Shown: positions 52,711-61,879, counted from the first letter of the stretch. The stretch is DNA of 64,000 bases from IMGVR_UViG_3300041411_000080:248001-312000; one strand, 5' to 3'. The notes: a model not told the origin generated them from the sequence alone. Numbers and translations are program-made.

Positions 52711-53874
52711 ATGTCCAAAGTAGATCTCCCGATTAAAATCTTCAATGCTAACAAAACCGACTACGACTCCAAAGAGATCATTCTGGGTCAAGAACCGGGG
52801 CTGTTCGATTCGATCAACAATCACCACCCCGTACTCTTCAACCTTTATAAGCGTTTGAAGATGATGGACTGGGATGAGAACGAATTCCCTTATGCTGACT
52901 GCCTGCATGAGTTTGAGACTTGTGACCGTACGTCTTACGAGATGATGATCAAGACTCTGGCTTGGCAATGGGAAGCTGACGCTACTGCTTCACGTTCGAT
53001 CATTAACGTGTTGGCTCCAGTACTAACTGACTCGCGTGTATTCGCGGGCTACAGTCTGATCACCAGTAACGAATGTCTGCATGCTCTGACTTATTCGGAG
53101 ATCGTGCGTAACTCGTTTAAGAATCCTCAAGTGATTCTGGATGAGATCCTGAAAGTACAAGAAGCTCAAGAGCGTCTGGTAACTGTAGCTAAGGTAATGG
53201 GTGAAGCACACGACGCTTCTCATGCTTACGCTTGCGGCACTATCCCGAATGATCAAGCTCTGTACAACAAGATCTTCAAGTTCCTGCTGGCTCTGTACTA
53301 CCTTGAGCGTGTTCAGTTCATGGCATCGTTTGCTGTGACCTTCGCCTTCGGTAAGATGGGTCGCTTCCAACCGATCGTAATGGGCGTTCAGAAGATCGCT
53401 ATCGACGAGTTCGAAGTACACGCTCAGTTCGGTCAAGAAGTTATCAAGGCTCTGCTGAAAACAGAACGTGGCCGTCTGGCTTACGAACAAACCAAAGAAG
53501 AAGGCACTAAGCTGTTCTGGGAAGTTCTGATGTCGGAAGTTCGCTGGTTGATGTACCTGTTCTCTGAAGGTCGTGAGCTGCCGGGTGTAACGCTGAAGAA
53601 GATGATCCAATGGGTCCTGTTCAACGGTAATGCTGCTGGTACCTTCACTGGCCACAAAGACATGCTGACTGAAGAGCATGCCGCTGAGTTCTTGGCGATC
53701 ACTGGTTTCGAACTGGAATGGCCTGAGAAGAACCCACTCCCGTACATGACCGAATACCTCGATCTTGCTGCAAACCAAACCAGTCCTCAAGAAGTAGACA
53801 ATAACCAGTACATGGTTAACGCTCTGGACACTTCCAACGAACAAGCAGAATTCGAAGTCGACTTCCTCGATTAA
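52711..53874 (+). CDS. nrdB: ribonucleotide reductase class Ia beta subunit
   Basis: di-iron ligands D, ECLH..TYS (radical Tyr), LE..F..SF, IAIDE..H; C-terminal SPQE...Y. Confidence 0.95.
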   Translation: MSKVDLPIKIFNANKTDYDSKEIILGQEPGLFDSINNHHPVLFNLYKRLKMMDWDENEFPYADCLHEFETCDRTSYEMMIKTLAWQWEADATASRSIINVLAPVLTDSRVFAGYSLITSNECLHALTYSEIVRNSFKNPQVILDEILKVQEAQERLVTVAKVMGEAHDASHAYACGTIPNDQALYNKIFKFLLALYYLERVQFMASFAVTFAFGKMGRFQPIVMGVQKIAIDEFEVHAQFGQEVIKALLKTERGRLAYEQTKEEGTKLFWEVLMSEVRWLMYLFSEGRELPGVTLKKMIQWVLFNGNAAGTFTGHKDMLTEEHAAEFLAITGFELEWPEKNPLPYMTEYLDLAANQTSPQEVDNNQYMVNALDTSNEQAEFEVDFLD

Positions 53875-54551: not shown

Positions 54552-55787
54552 TTATGGAACGAGTTCCAATACTGGACGCCAACCGTAACCGGAAGTCGGA
54601 GGAGTTGTATCACTAATAGCCCACGAAGTCTGGATACTAGTAAACCCTCGGGTCGTACCACCGTAAACATGCGTGAGAACACCTGGTCGTACAGCACCAT
54701 TTGCAACGCATAGGTCAGTGTTATTATAAGCTGCCCAGAAGTTGGTGTTAACAACAACGGTAGAGTTATCGTAAACCGAGTACATGTAACGGTTCCACTC
54801 GGCATCCGTCATCAGACGGCACTTGTAGTTCTTACCTCCGATAGTAACCAACTTACCATCCGCTGTGTTACTGATACCAGCAGCGTTAAGTACCGAGCGG
54901 TTAATACCATCGCGGAAACTCTTCTGCGCGATGTAGAGTTCTTTACCGTTCTCTACAAACTTCATCCACGCGCCAGCGCCGGATACTACAGTACCGACAG
55001 TCACGCCAGCTAAGGTCGACAGATCAGCTACGTTGATCAGTTCCTCGGGTTGTACCAGTCCTTTATACGGGGTTACTGGAACTGGCGGCGTGGTACCTTT
55101 CTCAACCAACATCGGACGCCAACCGTAGTACATCTCGGTATTGTTGTCACTAGTGTACCAAACACCCATGACGTTAGGAACGTTGTTAGTGATAGGGTAG
55201 CACAAACCACGAACAGCGTGTCCAGTATTGGTGACAATTTCCTTCATGTAGGACATGCCACCCGGTGGGAAAGTATTGATCGCCTGAGTTTCTGAGATAA
55301 GTGGGATACCCAACATCTTCTCAGTATAACTACCCCAGTTCTCACGAGTAGCTGGAAGTTGGTTAGCCCGTTCACCAGCATAAACGTTGTAGATGTAACG
55401 ATCCCAAGCACCGCCACCGTTAGCATTGGATGCAGCTAGGTTATTAGCTTTCATACCAGTCATGAATTCAACGAGGAATGTCTTCCCACCGATAATGATT
55501 TCTTTACCAGTCTGAGCTGTGTTAATAGCTGGCCATGTTAATGCAGCGCGTAGCGGTTTCTTGGCGATGTAGATATTGTATCCGTTGTCTTCAACAAAGT
55601 GTAGCCACCCGGCATCACTGTTAATAGATACACCAGCGGTTAAACCTATTTGGCTTGCTAACTGCGAACCGGTAATGAAGTTCTTAGCGCTCACCACCCC
55701 TTTAAATGGCGTCCCAGCCGGAAAGGGTAAATTACTGTCATCCGAAGCGGGGGCCTGATTTCCAGACACTAAGAGTTGTTCTAGCAT
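54552..55787 (-). CDS. virion/tail-fibre-like protein with two tandem domains each ending GWRP.L
   Basis: repeated W.[HK]F......YIA.K..R, I..GGK, W.RY.Y and YGWRP motifs. Confidence 0.7.
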   Translation of the reverse strand: MLEQLLVSGNQAPASDDSNLPFPAGTPFKGVVSAKNFITGSQLASQIGLTAGVSINSDAGWLHFVEDNGYNIYIAKKPLRAALTWPAINTAQTGKEIIIGGKTFLVEFMTGMKANNLAASNANGGGAWDRYIYNVYAGERANQLPATRENWGSYTEKMLGIPLISETQAINTFPPGGMSYMKEIVTNTGHAVRGLCYPITNNVPNVMGVWYTSDNNTEMYYGWRPMLVEKGTTPPVPVTPYKGLVQPEELINVADLSTLAGVTVGTVVSGAGAWMKFVENGKELYIAQKSFRDGINRSVLNAAGISNTADGKLVTIGGKNYKCRLMTDAEWNRYMYSVYDNSTVVVNTNFWAAYNNTDLCVANGAVRPGVLTHVYGGTTRGFTSIQTSWAISDTTPPTSGYGWRPVLELVP

Positions 55788-55877
55788 GATAGGTTTCCTG
55801 AGGATATTTATATAAGCATAGGATTAAGCCAATACCTACCCGATTATGATATGTTTAAGATTATCTTTGGAGCGAGT

Positions 55878-58220
55878 ATGAATTCGCTAGACCTTTTGAT
55901 CCGTCGAATTAAAGACCGGATAACCGTTTCTAATGAAGATGCGGTTGATATAGTAAAGCAGTACTGGGATGACGCCGTAGATACAGTTAAGGGTTACTGG
56001 CAGGACGTTGACGAGGCGATCGTAGAAGAAACGGGCATTCCCCGAGCTTCTCTATCACAGCTCTTAGACGACAACCGGCAAGCTCATAGCTATGCTAACG
56101 TTGGCGGTAACTCAGGGGTAGCCAGTTACGATCTTGGAGATGATTGGTTTCTAGTGAACTTCACAACTGGTTCTCGATACCTCTACACCACCAAGTCTGC
56201 TACACGCGAACAGATTGAAGAAATGAAACGGTATGCTAATGATGGTAAAGGTCTGAACTCCTACATCATGCGTACTCTTAAAACCAATTATGCTGGACGA
56301 AACGTTAAAGGAGAGATCCTCATTAAACCGGGGATGGAACATTACTCTCGCCATGCATTTAAACGAATCGAACTATTAGAGGCATACCGAAGTACCATGA
56401 ACACACAAGTCGTAAGTACTGAAGGGTTGATTGCCGATATTAAGAAATTCTTCGGAGTATCGAACAAATCCGCTAGAAAACTCTTTATTGACAACACTTT
56501 CGGCTGGAGTGTAATAGAACACATTGAGCGCGATATCCTGAGACCAGAATGGTTGAAAGACCAAACCTACAACAAAGGTGAGGTTAGTGGTAAGAGCGTT
56601 CTGAAGTATATAGGTAAAAACGGTAAGGTTGATATCACTGGTGCAAATAAACAATTGGATGCTTTCCTTGCGGCGCGCATACGAGTTAAGAAAGCTACCG
56701 ATGACTGGCGCCGTAAAACTAAGCCAGTTGCCGATATACTGATGCAAAACGCTAGAAAGCTAACGCCTGAAGTCTATGCCAGTGCCAAAGCAGCCATGGA
56801 TAAAATCCCAGTCGAGAAATATGACGTGAACTATCCAACTACCCCAGTGGTGGGTAATGGTAAACGTCATGAGAATCCTAAGCGGGTAGATTTTGTTTAC
56901 ACACCAGTTGACCAGCCGATACCGGCACTCGATGAGGGTGAGGCTCTTAAATTAGCTGCGGATATCCAACGGTCGATTGACGAGTTTAAGAAAAACATGA
57001 CGGGTGCACCAGATGAATGGCCCGATATCATGCATGCCATGGTTTATACCATGCAACCCAAGAACTACGGTGGTGTTCCTTACGACGATTGGAATTCTCT
57101 TATTTGGGATATCCTTAGCCCAGACACTAACGAGACAACTCACTATAGCGGCATGATCGCAAACCGACTGTACTGGGATGCAATCGTGGGGTTAGTTCGA
57201 TATCTTGATGTATCAATCAAAGGGGACACTATTATTTCTGGTGAAAATTACACACCTTCGAATGTTAAAGAGGCTAATATGCATCGCACGCTGCTAAGAT
57301 ATAAAGACCAAATTAGTAAGGCCGGCCAAGACGGTCTTGATCCGGTGGCCAGACAGTTTATGTCGGTAGGTCTTGAGTCATTGGGTGGTGAACCATTGTC
57401 AACCCATGGTACCAATGCTCCAACCAATAGCTCTGAAGCGTTTAATGACCCAATGGTCCCCTCTATGGAAGACCTGCTTGGATCAATTAAGAAGTTCTTC
57501 ACTAAAGGTAAGGACACCGCTATCTACGATACCGTAGGTAAAGGCTTCCTTCAAGATCTCGTGCACGAAGTGAAGAAGTATACCGATCCTAACTGGGTTA
57601 AGACCCTAGGTGTAGTAGAACCTCAGAAAGTAAGCGTGGATGGTGCTAACCTTATTGCCGATTTTGACAAAGTCGTTCCAGAGTTTATTAAAGCCTGTCA
57701 AGCCAACCGCGTGGAACACCACAAAGTGACCGAGCAAGCATTCAGTAACATGGAAACCGTGATGGACATGGTCAAACGTAAACAGCTTGATAACTCAACT
57801 AACGTTGAGAAAGCCATTACGATCATGAAAGCTACTCGTCAACTGAAAGCTCCTAAGGTAGAAGTACCTAAGGTGACTATGCAGAAAGGTGAAGTCAAGA
57901 CCTTGAACGCTGAACAGATTGTTGATCACGCTAAGAAGGTACATGCCTTGTTCGATGTTCTGGGTGCCGATCTGACATTCGTTAAAAGGTGGAATGATAA
58001 CTTCATTAACACCCATGCTTGGATGGATTGGAAGTACGTAGGTAAGTCCAACTACAGCGAGCTGTATCAACAAGTAAAAGATCCTAAGTTTACTGAACTG
58101 TATCAGAAGGCAATGGAAAATGTTTACGACATGCATCGTGTAGGCGTGGAGTTCCATAAACTACAGCCTTACATCATGGCCGTATTCCAACTGATTGAGA
58201 AATCGGTTAAAGACAAGTGA
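55878..58220 (+). CDS. head (ejection-type) polyprotein with multiple prohead-protease sites and a KTSC-like N-terminal module
   Basis: SNE, STE, SGE, GLE and SME sites (S/A/G-x-E); NSGVASY...VNF..G..YLY...GLNSYI. Confidence 0.7.
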   Translation: MNSLDLLIRRIKDRITVSNEDAVDIVKQYWDDAVDTVKGYWQDVDEAIVEETGIPRASLSQLLDDNRQAHSYANVGGNSGVASYDLGDDWFLVNFTTGSRYLYTTKSATREQIEEMKRYANDGKGLNSYIMRTLKTNYAGRNVKGEILIKPGMEHYSRHAFKRIELLEAYRSTMNTQVVSTEGLIADIKKFFGVSNKSARKLFIDNTFGWSVIEHIERDILRPEWLKDQTYNKGEVSGKSVLKYIGKNGKVDITGANKQLDAFLAARIRVKKATDDWRRKTKPVADILMQNARKLTPEVYASAKAAMDKIPVEKYDVNYPTTPVVGNGKRHENPKRVDFVYTPVDQPIPALDEGEALKLAADIQRSIDEFKKNMTGAPDEWPDIMHAMVYTMQPKNYGGVPYDDWNSLIWDILSPDTNETTHYSGMIANRLYWDAIVGLVRYLDVSIKGDTIISGENYTPSNVKEANMHRTLLRYKDQISKAGQDGLDPVARQFMSVGLESLGGEPLSTHGTNAPTNSSEAFNDPMVPSMEDLLGSIKKFFTKGKDTAIYDTVGKGFLQDLVHEVKKYTDPNWVKTLGVVEPQKVSVDGANLIADFDKVVPEFIKACQANRVEHHKVTEQAFSNMETVMDMVKRKQLDNSTNVEKAITIMKATRQLKAPKVEVPKVTMQKGEVKTLNAEQIVDHAKKVHALFDVLGADLTFVKRWNDNFINTHAWMDWKYVGKSNYSELYQQVKDPKFTELYQKAMENVYDMHRVGVEFHKLQPYIMAVFQLIEKSVKDK

Positions 58221-58227
58221 GGTTAGC

Positions 58228-59217
58228 ATGTCTATCACTACCCTAACGAAATACAAAGACCAAATTAGTAAGGCTGGTCAAGATGGTCTTGATCCAGTGG
58301 CATGTCAGTTCATGCAAGCTGGTTTGGAGTCAATGTGTAATGTGTTGACAACATCATTGGAACATCAGGATGACAGTACCGCTACGCAGCGACTAGAAGC
58401 GATCGTTGACAAACAACTGGTGTCTAATGAAGGCATCTTCGATAACATCAAGAAATTGTTTGGCGGTAAACCAAAGCCTAAGGACGATGGTCCTGTTCCA
58501 GAAGCAGCTATCGAAATTAGTTCTGTCGATAAAGCTGAAGCATTTGTTAAGTCTACAGATACTGAAATCCCAGCCAAGACGGTAAGTAAAGGTTATAGTG
58601 CCTTGTTCCTTAAAGGCGGTAACTATAATCCTAATTGGCTTAAAGACCTAACCAAGGATTTGACTGAGTATGAGAAACTCATCCGCGCAACCGTTAACTA
58701 TGAAAAGGTAATGAAGCGTTGGCACGACAAATATAAATCGCAGCTGGACAACTTCGTTGGTGACACTGAGCGTCAACCAGAATTCCTGGCCGTACTTAAA
58801 CAATACGTGAAAGATCAACCCAAGCCATGGATCGAACTTTATCCATCAAATCACGACTACCTGATCTTCGGTAAACAGTTGGACGATGGTGAGGACTTCG
58901 ATCGGGATGTTCCTGGGTCCGCTGGAACCACCGCCGTAGATATTCCAGAACAATCAGCTACCCAAGTAAGGCAGGTCGTTAACAAAGTTGTGACGGTTTA
59001 CAATGATCTTTACAACGTGATCTACGATATGGGTTACTATGGTGCAGACTTCACCGATGCTCCTTTCCGTGGCTATGCGTTCGATGAGGAAGTGGTCGAG
59101 GAACTTAATAAGCTTCGCATTCACGCACATGCTAACAATAACCCAGTTGATTGCGCCAGTTCGATCGATAGTCGCCTGAGTACTATTCTCTCGTGCTTAG
59201 GTAACTATGTGAGTTAA
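58228..59217 (+). CDS. head protein with propeptide and protease sites
   Basis: GAGG RBS; GLE, SLE, SNE-GIFDNIKKLFG. Confidence 0.75.
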   Translation: MSITTLTKYKDQISKAGQDGLDPVACQFMQAGLESMCNVLTTSLEHQDDSTATQRLEAIVDKQLVSNEGIFDNIKKLFGGKPKPKDDGPVPEAAIEISSVDKAEAFVKSTDTEIPAKTVSKGYSALFLKGGNYNPNWLKDLTKDLTEYEKLIRATVNYEKVMKRWHDKYKSQLDNFVGDTERQPEFLAVLKQYVKDQPKPWIELYPSNHDYLIFGKQLDDGEDFDRDVPGSAGTTAVDIPEQSATQVRQVVNKVVTVYNDLYNVIYDMGYYGADFTDAPFRGYAFDEEVVEELNKLRIHAHANNNPVDCASSIDSRLSTILSCLGNYVS

Positions 59218-59223
59218 CTTAAC

Positions 59224-59250
59224 GCCTCCCTTCGGGGAGGCTTTATGTCG
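59224..59250 (+). terminator. hairpin terminator with TTTATGTCG tail
   Basis: GCCTCCC-TTCG-GGGAGGC-TTTATGTCG. Confidence 0.85.
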
Positions 59251-59337
59251 TCAAGGATTACTGACCTGTGAAATCGTACGTAGCAATCCCGCTACATTAA
59301 CTGATACCAAATCCCATTGGGGAACAGGATACAGAAA

Positions 59338-60192
59338 ATGATGAAGCTAAAAGAAGCAGAACCCGTTGACGAAGTTGTACACTATAACCCACACCACCTG
59401 ATCGAAGGTGATGCTGCGGAATATGATCCGAACTCTAAAGCTCGGAACGCGGGTCAATATAAATACCAACTGCTTGATGCACTATACCACTACTTCGATC
59501 CAGAGCCACACGGCGATAATGACGATCCAAAACCAGATACTGAAGGTGAGAGACCAGACTCATTGGTAGGTCACTCGGAAGCTATCGCAAAACTATTGGG
59601 CGGTGGGTTCTACCTAGACGCAGGTGATGATCCGCTGAATGCGTGTGCCCTCAGAACAGAAGTAGGTTTTACTCAGTTTCGAGATAGTACCACATTTATT
59701 GGTGGTGAGATCACCCGTGGACACCTACCTCAAATCCGACGTTGGTGCTACGCTCATCTCGGTAATGCCATTTATCTCGATGCAACTGGTTATTCGGATG
59801 AATGGGAAGTAGGTAAAGAGCAATCAGCATTTGAACAATTGATGTCTCTAGCTGGTCGTACCAAGGAAGTCATTGACGATGGGATCTGCAAGAACTGGCC
59901 AACGAATTCCAAAGCTGTGATGAACTTCATCAATGCTAACCAGACTGATCCGATCTACAGTATCAACCGCATCTACGAAGAGAGTGAACAGGTCGAAACG
60001 AAATGGCTTATCGAAGGGCGGTTCTTGGCAGAAGAACTAATCAAGATCCCAGGGTTCCAACAGAACTTTAACAAGCTGGTTATCTTCGGCGCGATGCGTT
60101 ATATCCTCGCAGGTGAGATAAACCTGAACAAGCTCTACCGCTTGATGGCTAAGCTTGGCCGTATCAATACCAAACTTTACTTCGTAGGTTAA
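59338..60192 (+). CDS. hypothetical protein
   Basis: about 284-aa ORF, AGGA RBS. Confidence 0.8.
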   Translation: MMKLKEAEPVDEVVHYNPHHLIEGDAAEYDPNSKARNAGQYKYQLLDALYHYFDPEPHGDNDDPKPDTEGERPDSLVGHSEAIAKLLGGGFYLDAGDDPLNACALRTEVGFTQFRDSTTFIGGEITRGHLPQIRRWCYAHLGNAIYLDATGYSDEWEVGKEQSAFEQLMSLAGRTKEVIDDGICKNWPTNSKAVMNFINANQTDPIYSINRIYEESEQVETKWLIEGRFLAEELIKIPGFQQNFNKLVIFGAMRYILAGEINLNKLYRLMAKLGRINTKLYFVG

Positions 60193-60490: not shown

Positions 60491-60522
60491 CAATGTTATA
60501 GACTTTCAAACTGGTGAGTGTT

Positions 60523-61164
60523 ATGATCGAACTATTAATAGTTGAGGAAAAGATAGTAACTGGTCCTATTCCAGGTACTCCCACGCTTTTAGCGGGTAAC
60601 GATCAACTAGGTTGGTATGGTGAAGTGCCAGTAACAGATTTTATAAATGGTCCAGATCTAGCTACACGCGTGGGTCTAACTTTGGGTACTAGTCAAAACC
60701 CAACCGGAGCATGGCTAAAGTTTGCCTATCAAGGTAAAATACTTTTTATTGCTAAGCAAACATATCGCCACTCTATATCGATGGATGCTTTCCTCAATGC
60801 ACAGATTGCAACTGGCAATAGAACTGTAACCATAGGTGGTCGAACCTACCGGATAAGATTGATGACCGGTACTGACGGTGCAGGTGAACTGGTAACCGGT
60901 GGGGAATGGAATGCACTGATGTATCGCGTAGCTGCCGGTACACAAATTCCCGCTGAAGATAAGTGGGCGAACTACACCACATCTGAAATGAGTTATGGTT
61001 CAGGCGGCAATGGCTATATTACCTGGTGTCGTGAAGTTAGAGCCTCAGCAGGCGCTATATACGCCACACGTGGTAACGGCAGTATAACAGCCATCCATGG
61101 CTATACCAAAGCCACCGCATCTTTTCAATATGGTTGGCGACCAGTACTTGAGTTAGTTCCATGA
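60523..61164 (+). CDS. virion/tail-fibre-like protein, GWRPVLE family
   Basis: GWYGEV, WLKFAY, GEWNAL, YGWRPVLELVP. Confidence 0.75.
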   Translation: MIELLIVEEKIVTGPIPGTPTLLAGNDQLGWYGEVPVTDFINGPDLATRVGLTLGTSQNPTGAWLKFAYQGKILFIAKQTYRHSISMDAFLNAQIATGNRTVTIGGRTYRIRLMTGTDGAGELVTGGEWNALMYRVAAGTQIPAEDKWANYTTSEMSYGSGGNGYITWCREVRASAGAIYATRGNGSITAIHGYTKATASFQYGWRPVLELVP

Positions 61165-61171
61165 GGTTACT

Positions 61172-61879
61172 ATGATTGAATTAATGTTAACGGTCCCTAA
61201 GCCAGTGGTCAACCCTTGGCCGGCAGGTATCCCTGGACCGCAGACCATAGCTACAGGTGATCAGAATATCGGTTTCTTTGGTGAAGTGTCGGGTACTGAT
61301 TTTATTACTTACCCTGATCTACAAACCGCAGTTGGCTTTACAACTGGCAACGCGATGAACCCGACTGGTGGATGGCTAAAACTAGCTTATAAAGGGAACG
61401 TCCAGTTCATCTCTAAACTTAGTGTTAGGAACAACGTTTCTTGGGCAGCTATGAATACGCTGGGTATTGTATCAGCCGCTCAGAATAAATTGATTACTAT
61501 TAAAGGTAAGGTTTACCGTCTACGCCTGATAAATGGTGTCAATGTCGACCCGTATCCAGTTAACGCCGATGATGCCACTGGTGGACCATACACAACTGGT
61601 ACTGAATGGAACCATCTTATCTATGGATTGCTATCAACCGCAGTTGGTGCACAGAACCTAGAGGGTCCGGCGTTGGCCACCTACGGTACTACTGATTTGG
61701 GACTGTCTCCATTTGGCAACGGTACGAGTATCCTTGTTAAGGAACTGGGTCCGGGTCCAGTGTCTATGGTTCGTGGTAACGCTAGTGGTGCTGTGCGTGG
61801 ACTTTATCGTTATGCAGCGCTAGCTAACGCGGATACGATCCGTGGATGGAAACCTGTGCTGGAATACGTCAGCGGTTAA
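61172..61879 (+). CDS. virion/tail-fibre-like protein, GWRPVLE family
   Basis: GFFGEV, WLKLAY, TEWNHL, GWKPVLEYV. Confidence 0.75.
   Translation: MIELMLTVPKPVVNPWPAGIPGPQTIATGDQNIGFFGEVSGTDFITYPDLQTAVGFTTGNAMNPTGGWLKLAYKGNVQFISKLSVRNNVSWAAMNTLGIVSAAQNKLITIKGKVYRLRLINGVNVDPYPVNADDATGGPYTTGTEWNHLIYGLLSTAVGAQNLEGPALATYGTTDLGLSPFGNGTSILVKELGPGPVSMVRGNASGAVRGLYRYAALANADTIRGWKPVLEYVSG

What the first reader, a model, noticed from the sequence alone, without database searches (positions are those of the whole stretch)
55878..59217. Head polyprotein formed by gene fusion, with duplicated propeptide and repeated post-cleavage amphipathic helix
Seen: YKDQISKAGQDGLDPVA.QFM..GLES occurs inside the long ORF (about 57300-57380) and at the start of the next gene (about 58250-58332). 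The internal copy follows an in-frame ATG at 57279 with an AGAGG RBS, suggesting a lost stop or a dual start. Modules begin STE-GLIADIKKFFG, SME-DLLGSIKKFF and SNE-GIFDNIKKLFG. Established: the phiKZ prohead protease cuts after S/A/G-x-E. Inference: the propeptide is a capsid-targeting signal, and the exposed amphipathic helix is an ejection or membrane-targeting signal for several different injected cargos, including a KTSC-like domain.
Basis: partly seen in the sequence, partly recalled or inferred. Interest (0 to 1): 0.6.

Follow-up and report, generated by a model that had tools for sequence, protein, structure and literature searches.

The report
Modular jumbo-phage head polyprotein locus
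Two adjacent genes of a giant Pseudomonas-type phage encode precursors of internal head proteins built from related, interchangeable ~260-residue modules. Each module sits behind a conserved protease cut site and a short MinD-like helix, and relatives show these genes being fused and split by recombination inside a shared propeptide.

Summary
Gene A (55878-58220, 780 aa) is the ortholog of 201phi2-1 gp455, a virion protein, and partly of phiKZ gp303, a processed head protein. Gene B (58228-59217, 329 aa) is absent from 201phi2-1.

- **Shared propeptide.** Both genes carry a ~70-aa cassette (P) whose 17-residue core is identical between them, with 6 synonymous and 0 non-synonymous changes. P matches the propeptide part of the phiKZ internal-head-protein family.
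- **Junctions.** Every module starts with S-x-E | G/D-φφ-x-x-I-K-K-F/L-F. Across 69 distinct junctions in 35 relatives, E is invariant and S is present in 66.
- **New point: related cargos.** The "different cargos" are distant paralogs of one ~260-aa domain. Only the N-terminal K domain is unrelated.
- **New point: shuffling.** Relatives combine 1-4 modules freely.
- **New point: a caught fusion.** One ~85-90% relative carries exactly the fusion expected from a crossover between the two P copies.

Cleavage is inferred from homologs and conservation, not shown for this phage. The helix is 8/14 identical to the B. subtilis MinD membrane anchor, but membrane targeting is untested. The KTSC call is inconclusive, and the internal start at 57279 is plausible but unproven.

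The parts
55878..58220 (+). Gene A: 780-aa (88.6 kDa) polyprotein precursor with architecture leader-K-M2-P-M3. Ortholog of 201phi2-1 gp455.
   Evidence: PHROG 17428, full length, E 0; 69% identity over 99%; same gene order nrdB, gp456-like, this gene, gp454-like; masses.
55878..55937 (+). N-terminal leader, residues 1-20. It ends in VSNE-20 and is followed by DAVDIVKQYW, a weak fourth copy of the junction helix.
   Evidence: conserved in 201phi2-1, Viktualia and many P00xx relatives.
55938..56423 (+). K module, residues 21-182. The folded core is about residues 40-133 (three strands, then two helices). It contains a conserved GME-154|HY site. It is possibly KTSC-like and is always N-terminal in relatives.
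   Evidence: pLDDT 75-87; KTSC sub-threshold; unrelated to the other modules.
56424..57245 (+). M2 module, residues 183-456 (31.0 kDa). It starts with the helix GLIADIKKFFG after STE-182 and ends at the conserved SIKG...SGE-456 site.
   Evidence: phiKZ gp303 ends 3 residues after the equivalent site. AF2 core at about 210-450.
57246..57470 (+). Internal propeptide cassette P, residues 457-531, with S/A/G-x-E sites at 500, 505, 520 and 531. The repeated core is at nt 57300-57380.
   Evidence: 4 sites versus 1.26 expected, P 0.013; phiKZ_IP positions 41-107; PHROG 6807.
57269..57281 (+). AGAGG, 5-nt spacer, then in-frame ATG (Met468). Either a relic or an active internal translation start.
57471..58217 (+). 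M3 module, residues 532-780 (28.7 kDa). It starts with DLLGSIKKFF after SME-531.
58219..58230 (+). GAGG ribosome-binding site overlapping A's TGA stop (58218-58220), then the ATG of gene B, which is in the +1 frame relative to A.
   Evidence: The same junction (TGAGGTAAGC ATG) is seen in L016.
58228..59217 (+). Gene B: 329-aa (36.9 kDa) precursor with architecture P-MB. It is absent from 201phi2-1. In relatives it is fused into the polyprotein (P0003/L012, phage D6) or stands alone (P0028/L016).
58228..58431 (+). Propeptide cassette P of gene B, residues 1-68. The repeated core is at nt 58252-58332. S/A/G-x-E sites at 34, 45 and 68.
58432..59214 (+). MB module, residues 69-329 (29.4 kDa). It has the helix GIFDNIKKLFG, a Lys/Pro-rich linker to about residue 96, and a folded core at 100-329.
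   Evidence: core pLDDT 80-90; fold relatives are found only among chimallivirus virion proteins.
59224..59251 (+). Intrinsic-terminator-like hairpin (7-bp stem, 6 G-C pairs) with a T-rich tail, directly after gene B. There is none between A and B, so the two genes look like one transcription unit.

Best explanation
Genes A and B are a late-operon pair encoding precursors of internal (probably ejected) head proteins of a 201phi2-1-like nucleus-forming jumbo phage.

Proposed sequence of events:
1. Each precursor carries one copy of P, the propeptide shared with the phiKZ_IP internal-head-protein family. P most likely brings the whole chain into the prohead core.
2. The prohead protease (81% identical to 201phi2-1 gp268, encoded elsewhere in this genome) then cuts after S-x-E at every module boundary.
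3. P is chopped into small pieces.
4. This frees K (about 15-18 kDa), M2 (31 kDa), M3 (29 kDa) and MB (29 kDa).

M2, M3 and MB are diverged paralogs of one ~260-aa helical domain. Its hallmark N-terminus, a short amphipathic helix ending in F-F/L-F-G followed by a basic linker, becomes the free N-terminus after cutting.

The conserved junctions and the P cassette also act as recombination points. Lineages carry different numbers and orders of modules, and whole genes are fused or separated. The window holds the 'two genes' state.

Status of each step:
- Shown here: homology, architecture, conservation and the recombination product.
- Shown for homologs by others: virion location and processing.
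- Inferred: cleavage at these exact sites in this phage, the targeting role of P, and ejection.
For: - Orthology and gene order with 201phi2-1 gp455 (a virion protein by mass spectrometry) and phiKZ gp303.
- phiKZ gp303 is proteolytically processed, packaged into the head and non-essential (bioRxiv 10.1101/2025.11.23.690004).
- Semi-tryptic cleavage peptides map to gp94, gp177 and gp303 (PMC10449902).
- The cleavage rule S/A/G-x-E is established (PMC9026906).
- The protease homolog is present in the genome.
- Across 69 distinct junctions in 35 proteins: E 69/69; S 66/69 at P3; N 51/69 at P2; G, D or S at P1'.
- P has dN 0 and dS about 1 between its two copies. It is enriched in cut sites and matches the propeptide zone of PF12699 and an IP paralog of the same genome.
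- The modules are paralogs without the helix.
- Architectures are combinatorial.
- L012 equals the window minus the stretch between the two P cores, with the crossover inside the 17-codon core. It is seen in 5 contigs from at least 4 sequencing runs.
- The split state recurs in L016.
- In phage Churi an M2 cassette sits exactly between two cut sites of the gp94 ortholog. phiKZ gp94 is an injected protein.
- AF2 places the helices and P in low-confidence flexible stretches between confident cores.
Against: - There are no proteomic or expression data for this phage.
- The primary papers with the gp455 and gp303 cleavage maps were not held, so the exact sites are unverified even for the homologs.
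- Depletion of S/A/G-x-E inside the folded modules is only marginal (3 observed versus 7.1 expected, P 0.055).
- P and K occur only in the 201phi2-1-like subset of the wider family, so P cannot be the general targeting device.
- A PHIKZ303-3xFLAG construct and blot appear in the supplement of PMC10449902, but gp303 is not among the proteins that paper reports as validated for injection.
- gp303 is dispensable in phiKZ.
Confidence: 0.7

Rival explanations
1. The reader's add-on, compatible with the main explanation: the helix exposed by cleavage is a membrane-targeting or ejection signal. After injection it would tether the modules to the inner membrane or the early-infection vesicle. Alternatively, before cleavage, several tandem helices would bring the precursor to membrane-bound proheads.
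For: - GLIADIKKFFGVSN is 8/14 identical to the B. subtilis MinD membrane-targeting helix GMMAKIKSFFGVRS. KKLFGG matches the E. coli MinD KRLFGG. The MinD sequences come from bioRxiv 10.1101/2024.06.11.598461 and PMC5471200.
- It is the single best match in 158,476 residues of this genome's ORFs, against 0.05 expected at 8/14 or better.
- Hydrophobic moments are 0.45-0.58, against 0.28-0.45 for the MinD helices.
- A basic patch follows the helix across the family.
- Injected phiKZ cargo associates with host membrane lipids and proteins (bioRxiv 10.1101/2024.03.24.586471).
Against: - The comparison was made post hoc from a short motif.
- Net charge is only +1, with a conserved Asp at +4.
- The moments lie below the 95th percentile of 11-mers in these proteins.
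- MinD helices are C-terminal.
- The helices have low AF2 confidence.
- No experiment bears on it.
Confidence: 0.3
2. The junction helix is an assembly element. It docks each module onto a common partner in the prohead core or inner body, or drives oligomerisation. It has no role after ejection.
For: - It is the most conserved part of otherwise very diverged paralogs: 4-6 of 11 residues identical against about 23% overall.
- It sits on a flexible linker outside the folded core.
- In SPN3US, incorporation of the PF12699 proteins depends on another head protein, gp243, the homolog of phiKZ gp177 (PMC5694885).
Against: No partner has been identified, and no complex prediction was attempted. The motif is confined to this one locus in the genome, so any partner would serve only these proteins.
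Confidence: 0.3
3. The conserved residues after the cut site are an extended (P1'-P10') recognition element. They make module boundaries fast, obligatory cleavage sites for the prohead protease.
For: Sequence on both sides of the scissile bond is unusually conserved (T/V-V-S-N-E | G-φ-φ-D). P carries several redundant sites, as described for phiKZ propeptides.
Against: Published logos report essentially no determinants beyond S/A-x-E (PMC9026906). Other substrates in this genome lack the motif. Some family members start directly with the helix, with no site to cut.
Confidence: 0.15
4. Dual start: ribosomes also initiate at ATG 57279. The cell would then make both the 780-aa chain and a separate 313-aa P-M3 protein with the same layout as gene B.
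For: - Met468 aligns with B's initiator Met and is kept in most P copies.
- It is the only internal ATG of A with a Shine-Dalgarno core, against a 2.6% background (0.6% for the strict motif).
- Purine-rich Shine-Dalgarno-like stretches precede the equivalent Met in L012 (GAGG), L022 (AGGA) and Phabio (AAGG), despite different residues there.
Against: The site is weak or absent in 201phi2-1, L018 and L019. There is no Met in Viktualia and several others. The pattern fits a decaying relic of a former gene start equally well.
Confidence: 0.3
5. Gene A is an ordinary uncleaved multi-domain virion protein, and the S-x-E motifs are incidental.
For: No direct cleavage data exist for this phage. Depletion of the motif inside domains is only marginal.
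Against: The E and S are invariant at 69 module boundaries while the flanks diverge. The homolog gp303 is processed. The same modules exist as separate genes.
Confidence: 0.05

Closest known systems
201phi2-1 gp455 / phiKZ gp303 (PHROG 17428 / 24656), head proteins of phiKZ-like phages
   Same: - Gene A is the full-length ortholog of gp455: 69% identity, the same K-M2-P-M3 layout, the same neighbours.
- gp303 shares K and M2.
- gp455 is a virion protein.
- gp303 is processed, packaged and non-essential.
   Different: - The window has an extra gene B (P-MB) that 201phi2-1 lacks.
- gp303 has a 270-aa N-terminal region, no P and no M3.
- The held literature does not describe the paralogy of the modules, the junction motif, or fusion and fission at this locus.
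PF12699 phiKZ_IP internal head ('inner body') proteins: phiKZ gp92-97, 162, 163; SPN3US gp53/54; Goslar gp53-58
   Same: - They share the propeptide cassette P (profile positions about 41-107).
- They are cut at S/A/G-x-E.
- They have long N-terminal propeptides.
- They form paralog families of variable size, and many members are injected.
- An M2 cassette sits inside the gp94 ortholog of phage Churi.
   Different: - The mature domains here are not detectably PF12699. Gene A scores 13.1 bits against a cut-off of 27, on P only. hhalign of the modules against this genome's five IP paralogs gives at most 30% probability.
- P is internal in gene A, not N-terminal.
Phage T4 internal proteins (IPI-III, Alt) with a capsid targeting sequence cut off by gp21
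   Same: Works alike: a removable targeting peptide brings cargo into the prohead core, a Glu-specific prohead protease of the same lineage removes it, the cargo is ejected with the DNA, and the cargo genes are highly variable between relatives.
   Different: - The T4 signal is 10-20 residues and strictly N-terminal, with one cargo per gene.
- Here the cassette is about 70 residues, can lie in the middle of the chain, and can serve several modules in one polyprotein.
- The mature T4 proteins share no conserved N-terminal helix.
MinD-type C-terminal amphipathic membrane-targeting helix
   Same: Near-identical short motif (I-K-K/S-F-F-G-V; K-K/R-L-F-G-G), similar hydrophobic moment, and basic flank.
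   Different: - MinD's helix is C-terminal and carries more positive charge.
- Here it is N-terminal after cleavage, with a conserved Asp.
- There is no common descent, and membrane binding is untested.
Viral polyproteins processed by a viral protease (picorna-like and potyviruses)
   Same: One translation product is cut at conserved linkers into several mature proteins, and module content changes by recombination at the linkers.
   Different: - Here cutting happens inside an assembling capsid, by the head-maturation protease.
- The modules are paralogs of one domain.
- The same modules also exist as single genes.

Membership tests
gp455/gp303 head-protein family (PHROG 17428) | Full-length profile match | tested here: met
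   PHROG 17428: E 0, residues 10-788 matched to profile positions 1-767 of 768. tblastn to 201phi2-1 gp455: 69% identity over 99% of the query.
gp455/gp303 head-protein family (PHROG 17428) | Conserved genome position next to the nrdB and gp456/gp454-like genes | tested here: met
   The window order is nrdB 52711-53874, gp456-like 54552-55787 (-), A, B, gp454-like 59317-60192. The same order is seen in 201phi2-1, phiKZ, Viktualia, D6, RVTF4 and Phabio.
gp455/gp303 head-protein family (PHROG 17428) | Present in virions and cut by the prohead protease | not testable with these tools
   Known only for the homologs (annotation note; papers).
PF12699 phiKZ_IP internal head proteins | Pfam match above the gathering score (27 bits) | tested here: not met
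   Gene A scores 13.1 bits, E 0.055, over residues 493-555 of the 789-aa reading from ATG 55851 (the P region), matched to profile positions 41-107. Gene B has no hit. Five true members of the same genome score 33-189 bits.
PF12699 phiKZ_IP internal head proteins | Homology of the mature (C-terminal) domain | tested here: not met
   hhalign of the module families against this genome's IP paralogs: MB 30% probability, all others below 1%. The fold search finds only loosely similar chimallivirus virion proteins.
PF12699 phiKZ_IP internal head proteins | Shared N-terminal propeptide segment | tested here: met
   P matches an IP paralog of the own genome at E 2e-7 and 3e-6, and PHROG 6807 'internal head protein' at E 1e-4 and 8e-5.
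KTSC domain (PF13619) | Pfam match at or near threshold | tested here: inconclusive
   There is no hit for the window's K domain even at E 10. KTSC is the top family among 22 K domains, but for only 4 of them, best E 0.025. A profile search of PDB sequences gave only eL38 at E 0.3.
KTSC domain (PF13619) | Small fold of three strands followed by a helix | tested here: inconclusive
   AF2 gives strands at 81-86, 90-95 and 100-104, then helices at 110-122 and 126-133, with pLDDT 75-87. Foldseek against the PDB with the full-length model found nothing. The domain was not folded on its own.
T4-type capsid targeting sequence system | Short N-terminal peptide sufficient for packaging, removed by the prohead protease | not testable with these tools
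   Only indirect evidence. There is one P per polypeptide in the K-containing relatives listed, never two. Its sequence is under strict purifying selection. It is flanked and crossed by cut sites.
MinD-type membrane-targeting helix | Amphipathic helix of 8-12 residues that binds membrane | not testable with these tools
   Sequence likeness of 8/14 and a comparable hydrophobic moment. Membrane binding needs an experiment.

The most novel reading that the evidence does not exclude
Nucleus-forming jumbo phages keep a recombination-driven, combinatorial library of injected protein modules.
- Each module carries a MinD-like membrane anchor that is silent inside the precursor and is unmasked only when the prohead protease creates its free N-terminus.
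- After ejection, these protease-armed anchors would tether the cargo to the host inner membrane and help build or populate the early-infection vesicle.
- The conserved junctions and propeptide cassettes double as crossover points. These let phages swap, stack, fuse and split modules, and even attach them to other packaged cargo such as the DarB-like helicase.
Probability: 0.15. Interest if true: 0.8.

Novelty: new variant of a known kind. Interest (0 to 1): 0.55.

Why it matters
What the many internal, injected head proteins of chimalliviruses do is an acknowledged open problem: "a key unsolved mystery", according to the Goslar structure preprint.

This locus gives three concrete handles:
1. 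A family-wide junction (cut site plus MinD-like helix plus basic patch). It defines module boundaries, predicts the mature N-termini, and can be tested directly for membrane binding.
2. A propeptide cassette under extreme purifying selection. It is a candidate packaging tag, useful for loading foreign proteins into jumbo-phage heads.
3. Natural fused, split and reshuffled variants. These show how the cargo repertoire evolves and provide ready-made comparisons for experiments.

If cleavage and targeting turn out as predicted, the finding mainly extends what is known for phiKZ and 201phi2-1. The membrane-anchor reading would be a real advance.

Tried and rejected
- **Megablast of the locus against phage records:** no match. 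Only protein-level searches worked.
- **Pfam on whole proteins and on single modules:** nothing above threshold.
- **Fold and atlas searches:** Foldseek against the PDB found no match at E <= 0.001 for either AF2 model. The ESM-Atlas shape search for B gave TM below 0.3. The atlas feature search for K gave no usable hit.
- **Are the modules PF12699 domains?** Not supported by hhalign.
- **Are folded modules purged of S/A/G-x-E?** Only marginal (P 0.055).
- **Is the helix exceptionally amphipathic?** No. It is moderate, below the 95th percentile of 11-mers, although at least as high as MinD's.
- **Is there a conserved second cut site between the helix and the MB core (AIE-96)?** It is not conserved in the family, so the helix probably stays on the mature protein.
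- **Readthrough joining A to B:** excluded. B is in the +1 frame, and a TAG follows A's TGA after one codon (sequence).
- **T4 gp21 Pfam model (PF03420) on the own genome:** no hit. The protease was found with 201phi2-1 gp268 instead.
- **Primary papers on 201phi2-1 and phiKZ proteolysis:** not held.
- **Contexts of distant family members:** the contigs were too short to be informative.


Full report
**What the window is.** The window is positions 248001-312000 of a complete 320,858-bp virus record with direct terminal repeats. Its closest named relative is Pseudomonas phage 201phi2-1 (Serwervirus), a phiKZ-like nucleus-forming jumbo phage. Local gene order matches that phage: nrdB (52711-53874), a gp456-like virion gene on the minus strand (54552-55787), the finding, then gp454- and gp453-like genes.

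**Checking the observation.**
- Gene A is 55878-58220 (780 aa). Gene B is 58228-59217 (329 aa). B's ATG follows a GAGG that overlaps A's TGA stop.
- The repeated peptide is at nt 57300-57380 and 58252-58332, with 23/27 residues identical. The longer alignment is 37/74, E 3e-16. Against every ORF of the genome, the A copy finds B at E 8e-13 and one further protein, an internal-head-protein paralog.
- In the 17-codon core the two copies differ at 6 synonymous and 0 non-synonymous sites. The identity is therefore kept by selection on the peptide, not by recent copying.
- ATG 57279 with AGAGG five bases upstream is real. It is the only one of A's 24 internal ATGs with a Shine-Dalgarno core, against a genome background of 2.6%.
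- The three S-x-E|helix module starts are real. There is a fourth, weaker one after residue 20. A junction profile finds no other copy in the genome.

**What the proteins are.**
- A matches PHROG 17428 end to end. It is 69% identical to 201phi2-1 gp455, annotated as a virion protein found by mass spectrometry. Residues 68-467 (numbered from the upstream ATG at 55851) match phiKZ gp303, a 'structural head protein'.
- Held papers state that gp303 is proteolytically processed, packaged into the head and dispensable. New semi-tryptic cleavage peptides map to gp94, gp177 and gp303.
- The S/A/G-x-E rule and the protease (phiKZ gp175, 201phi2-1 gp268) are established. This genome encodes an 81%-identical protease at G000 101667-102512.
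- B has no counterpart in 201phi2-1.

**Anatomy.**
- Comparison with nine phage proteins and 26 database relatives divides A into a leader (1-20), K (21-182), M2 (183-456), P (457-531) and M3 (532-780). B divides into P (1-68) and MB (69-329).
- AF2 models agree. Confident cores lie at about 40-133, 210-450 and 560-780 in A, and at 100-329 in B. The junction helices, the linkers after them and P are predicted helical or disordered with low confidence.
- P is flanked and crossed by cut motifs: 4 in 75 residues against 1.26 expected in A, and 3 in 68 against 0.82 expected in B.
- M2 also ends in a conserved site (SIKG...S-G-E-456). phiKZ gp303 stops three residues after the equivalent site.

**The junction.**
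- In 69 distinct junctions from 35 proteins, E is invariant, S holds P3 in 66 and N holds P2 in 51. P1' is G (43), D (17) or S (7).
- The next ten residues read φ-φ-D-x-[IV]-K-K-[FL]-F-G.
- The residues after that are specific to each module type.

**The 'different cargos' are paralogs.**
- With the first 14 residues removed, profile-profile comparison still links the module families colinearly: M2-MD 96%, M3-ME 93%, M2-ME 91%, M2-MB 90%, M2-M3 87%. K is unrelated.
- All modules are 242-283 residues long. The helix is therefore the ancestral N-terminus of one domain family, much better conserved than the rest (4-6 of 11 residues identical against about 23% overall).
- A profile search of 1.84 billion cluster representatives found 136 members. 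About half are single-module proteins (leader plus junction plus module). The rest have 2-4 modules, up to 1,393 aa.
- K and P occur only in the 201phi2-1-like subset.
- No solved structure resembles the modules. In the viral model library the only matches are chimallivirus virion proteins from Pseudomonas, Ralstonia, Klebsiella, Vibrio and Erwinia phages.
- They are not detectably PF12699 domains.

**Shuffling, fusion and fission.** Relatives carry K followed by almost any combination of modules: K-M2-P-M3, K-P-MB, K-MB-P-M3, K-M2-MB-P-MD-M3 and others.
- *The decisive case.* P0003/L012 was recovered in five contigs from at least four runs. It is 83% identical in DNA to the window up to 57386 and 77% identical from 58251 onward. 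The two alignments overlap in the 88 bases of the P core.
- A three-way alignment puts the switch from A-type to B-type sequence inside the 17-codon core. This is the product of a crossover between the two P copies. It turns 'two genes' into one K-M2-P-MB polyprotein.
- *Other states.* The split state (M3 stop, then P-MB) recurs in an independent lineage, L016. In phage D6 the MB module is internal to an 890-aa protein.
- In phage Churi an M2 cassette lies exactly between two cut sites of the gp94 ortholog, whose first 96 residues are 95% identical to phiKZ gp94. gp94 is an injected protein.

**The internal start.**
- Met468 aligns with B's initiator Met (M-x-x-T-L-x-x-Y-K-x-Q-I). A Met is kept at or next to that position in most P copies, whatever lies upstream.
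- Purine-rich Shine-Dalgarno-like stretches precede it in several diverged loci, but not convincingly in 201phi2-1. Some lineages lack the Met altogether.
- This fits a fused former gene start. Whether it still initiates is open.

**What P and the helix do.**
- Among the K-containing relatives mapped, none carries two P copies, however many modules follow. P was found once in all of them except three: P0012 and P0013 showed none, and P0026 was inferred only by analogy with Phabio.
- P is homologous to the propeptide of the PF12699 family. The SPN3US members of that family need another head protein (gp243, the homolog of phiKZ gp177) to be incorporated. A targeting role is the best inference, but it is not shown.
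GLIADIKKFFGVSN is 8/14 identical to the B. subtilis MinD membrane-targeting helix, and KKLFGG mirrors E. coli MinD.
- That match is the best in the whole genome's ORF set, with 0.05 expected by chance. The hydrophobic moment equals or exceeds MinD's, and a basic patch follows the helix across the family.
- Injected phiKZ cargo is known to gather host membrane. Against this lead: the motif is short, the comparison was post hoc, the net charge is low, and the moments are not extreme.

**Verdict.** The polyprotein, propeptide and fusion reading is largely right, and natural recombinants strengthen it. The 'diverse cargos' reading is corrected to paralogous modules. KTSC is inconclusive. Cleavage at these sites in this phage, targeting by P, the internal start and the helix function all remain to be tested.

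Noticed in passing
L025 1-1115 (protein P0126); L028 1171-4449 (phage pPa_SNUABM_DT01): A metagenomic protein, cut at the contig end, joins the C-terminus of a DarB-like/SNF2 helicase to a module of this family through a junction (VSME | GLGSIIDTVRKLFG). This helicase is related to one that a held paper describes as processed and packaged in phiKZ (gp203). In phage DT01 the helicase and the module gene are separate, with a hairpin between them. This is a second example of fusion and fission at a junction, involving an unrelated cargo.
   Followed up: partly
L004 2734-5079 (Churi gp238) versus L009 1501-3018 (phiKZ gp94): Churi's gp94 ortholog is 95% identical to phiKZ gp94 over the first 96 residues. 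It then carries a ~275-residue M2 cassette, bounded by cut sites, that phiKZ gp94 lacks. The cassette is about 35% identical to the M2 part of phiKZ gp303, which lies at a different locus.
   Followed up: yes
L022 5839-6570: One IMG/VR relative has only K plus P (243 aa). The frame then stops inside the tail of P, 230 bases before the gp454-like gene. This looks like a decayed or minimal version of the locus.
   Followed up: partly
window 54552-55787 (-), 60514-61164 (+), 61172-61879 (+): Three paralogous virion-type genes (the gp456/gp452 family, phiKZ gp83-like) flank the locus. All end in a GW[RK]PVLE[LY]V motif, and the 411-aa one contains two tandem copies of the domain.
   Followed up: no
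window 59224-59251: A strong terminator-like hairpin (GCCTCCC TTCG GGGAGGC, then a T-rich tail) lies seven bases after gene B's stop. There is none between A and B.
   Followed up: partly
own genome G000:C1 190949-198043 (locus L017 4950-12044, minus strand), outside the window: A cluster of five PF12699 internal-head-protein paralogs (33-189 bits). One carries a clear P-like segment followed by SVE | DFSESI..., reminiscent of the junction.
   Followed up: partly
window 56331-56345 (A residues 152-156): A conserved K-P-G-M-E | H-Y motif lies inside the K module, in a low-confidence linker. It could be a further cut site that trims K to residues 21-154.
   Followed up: no
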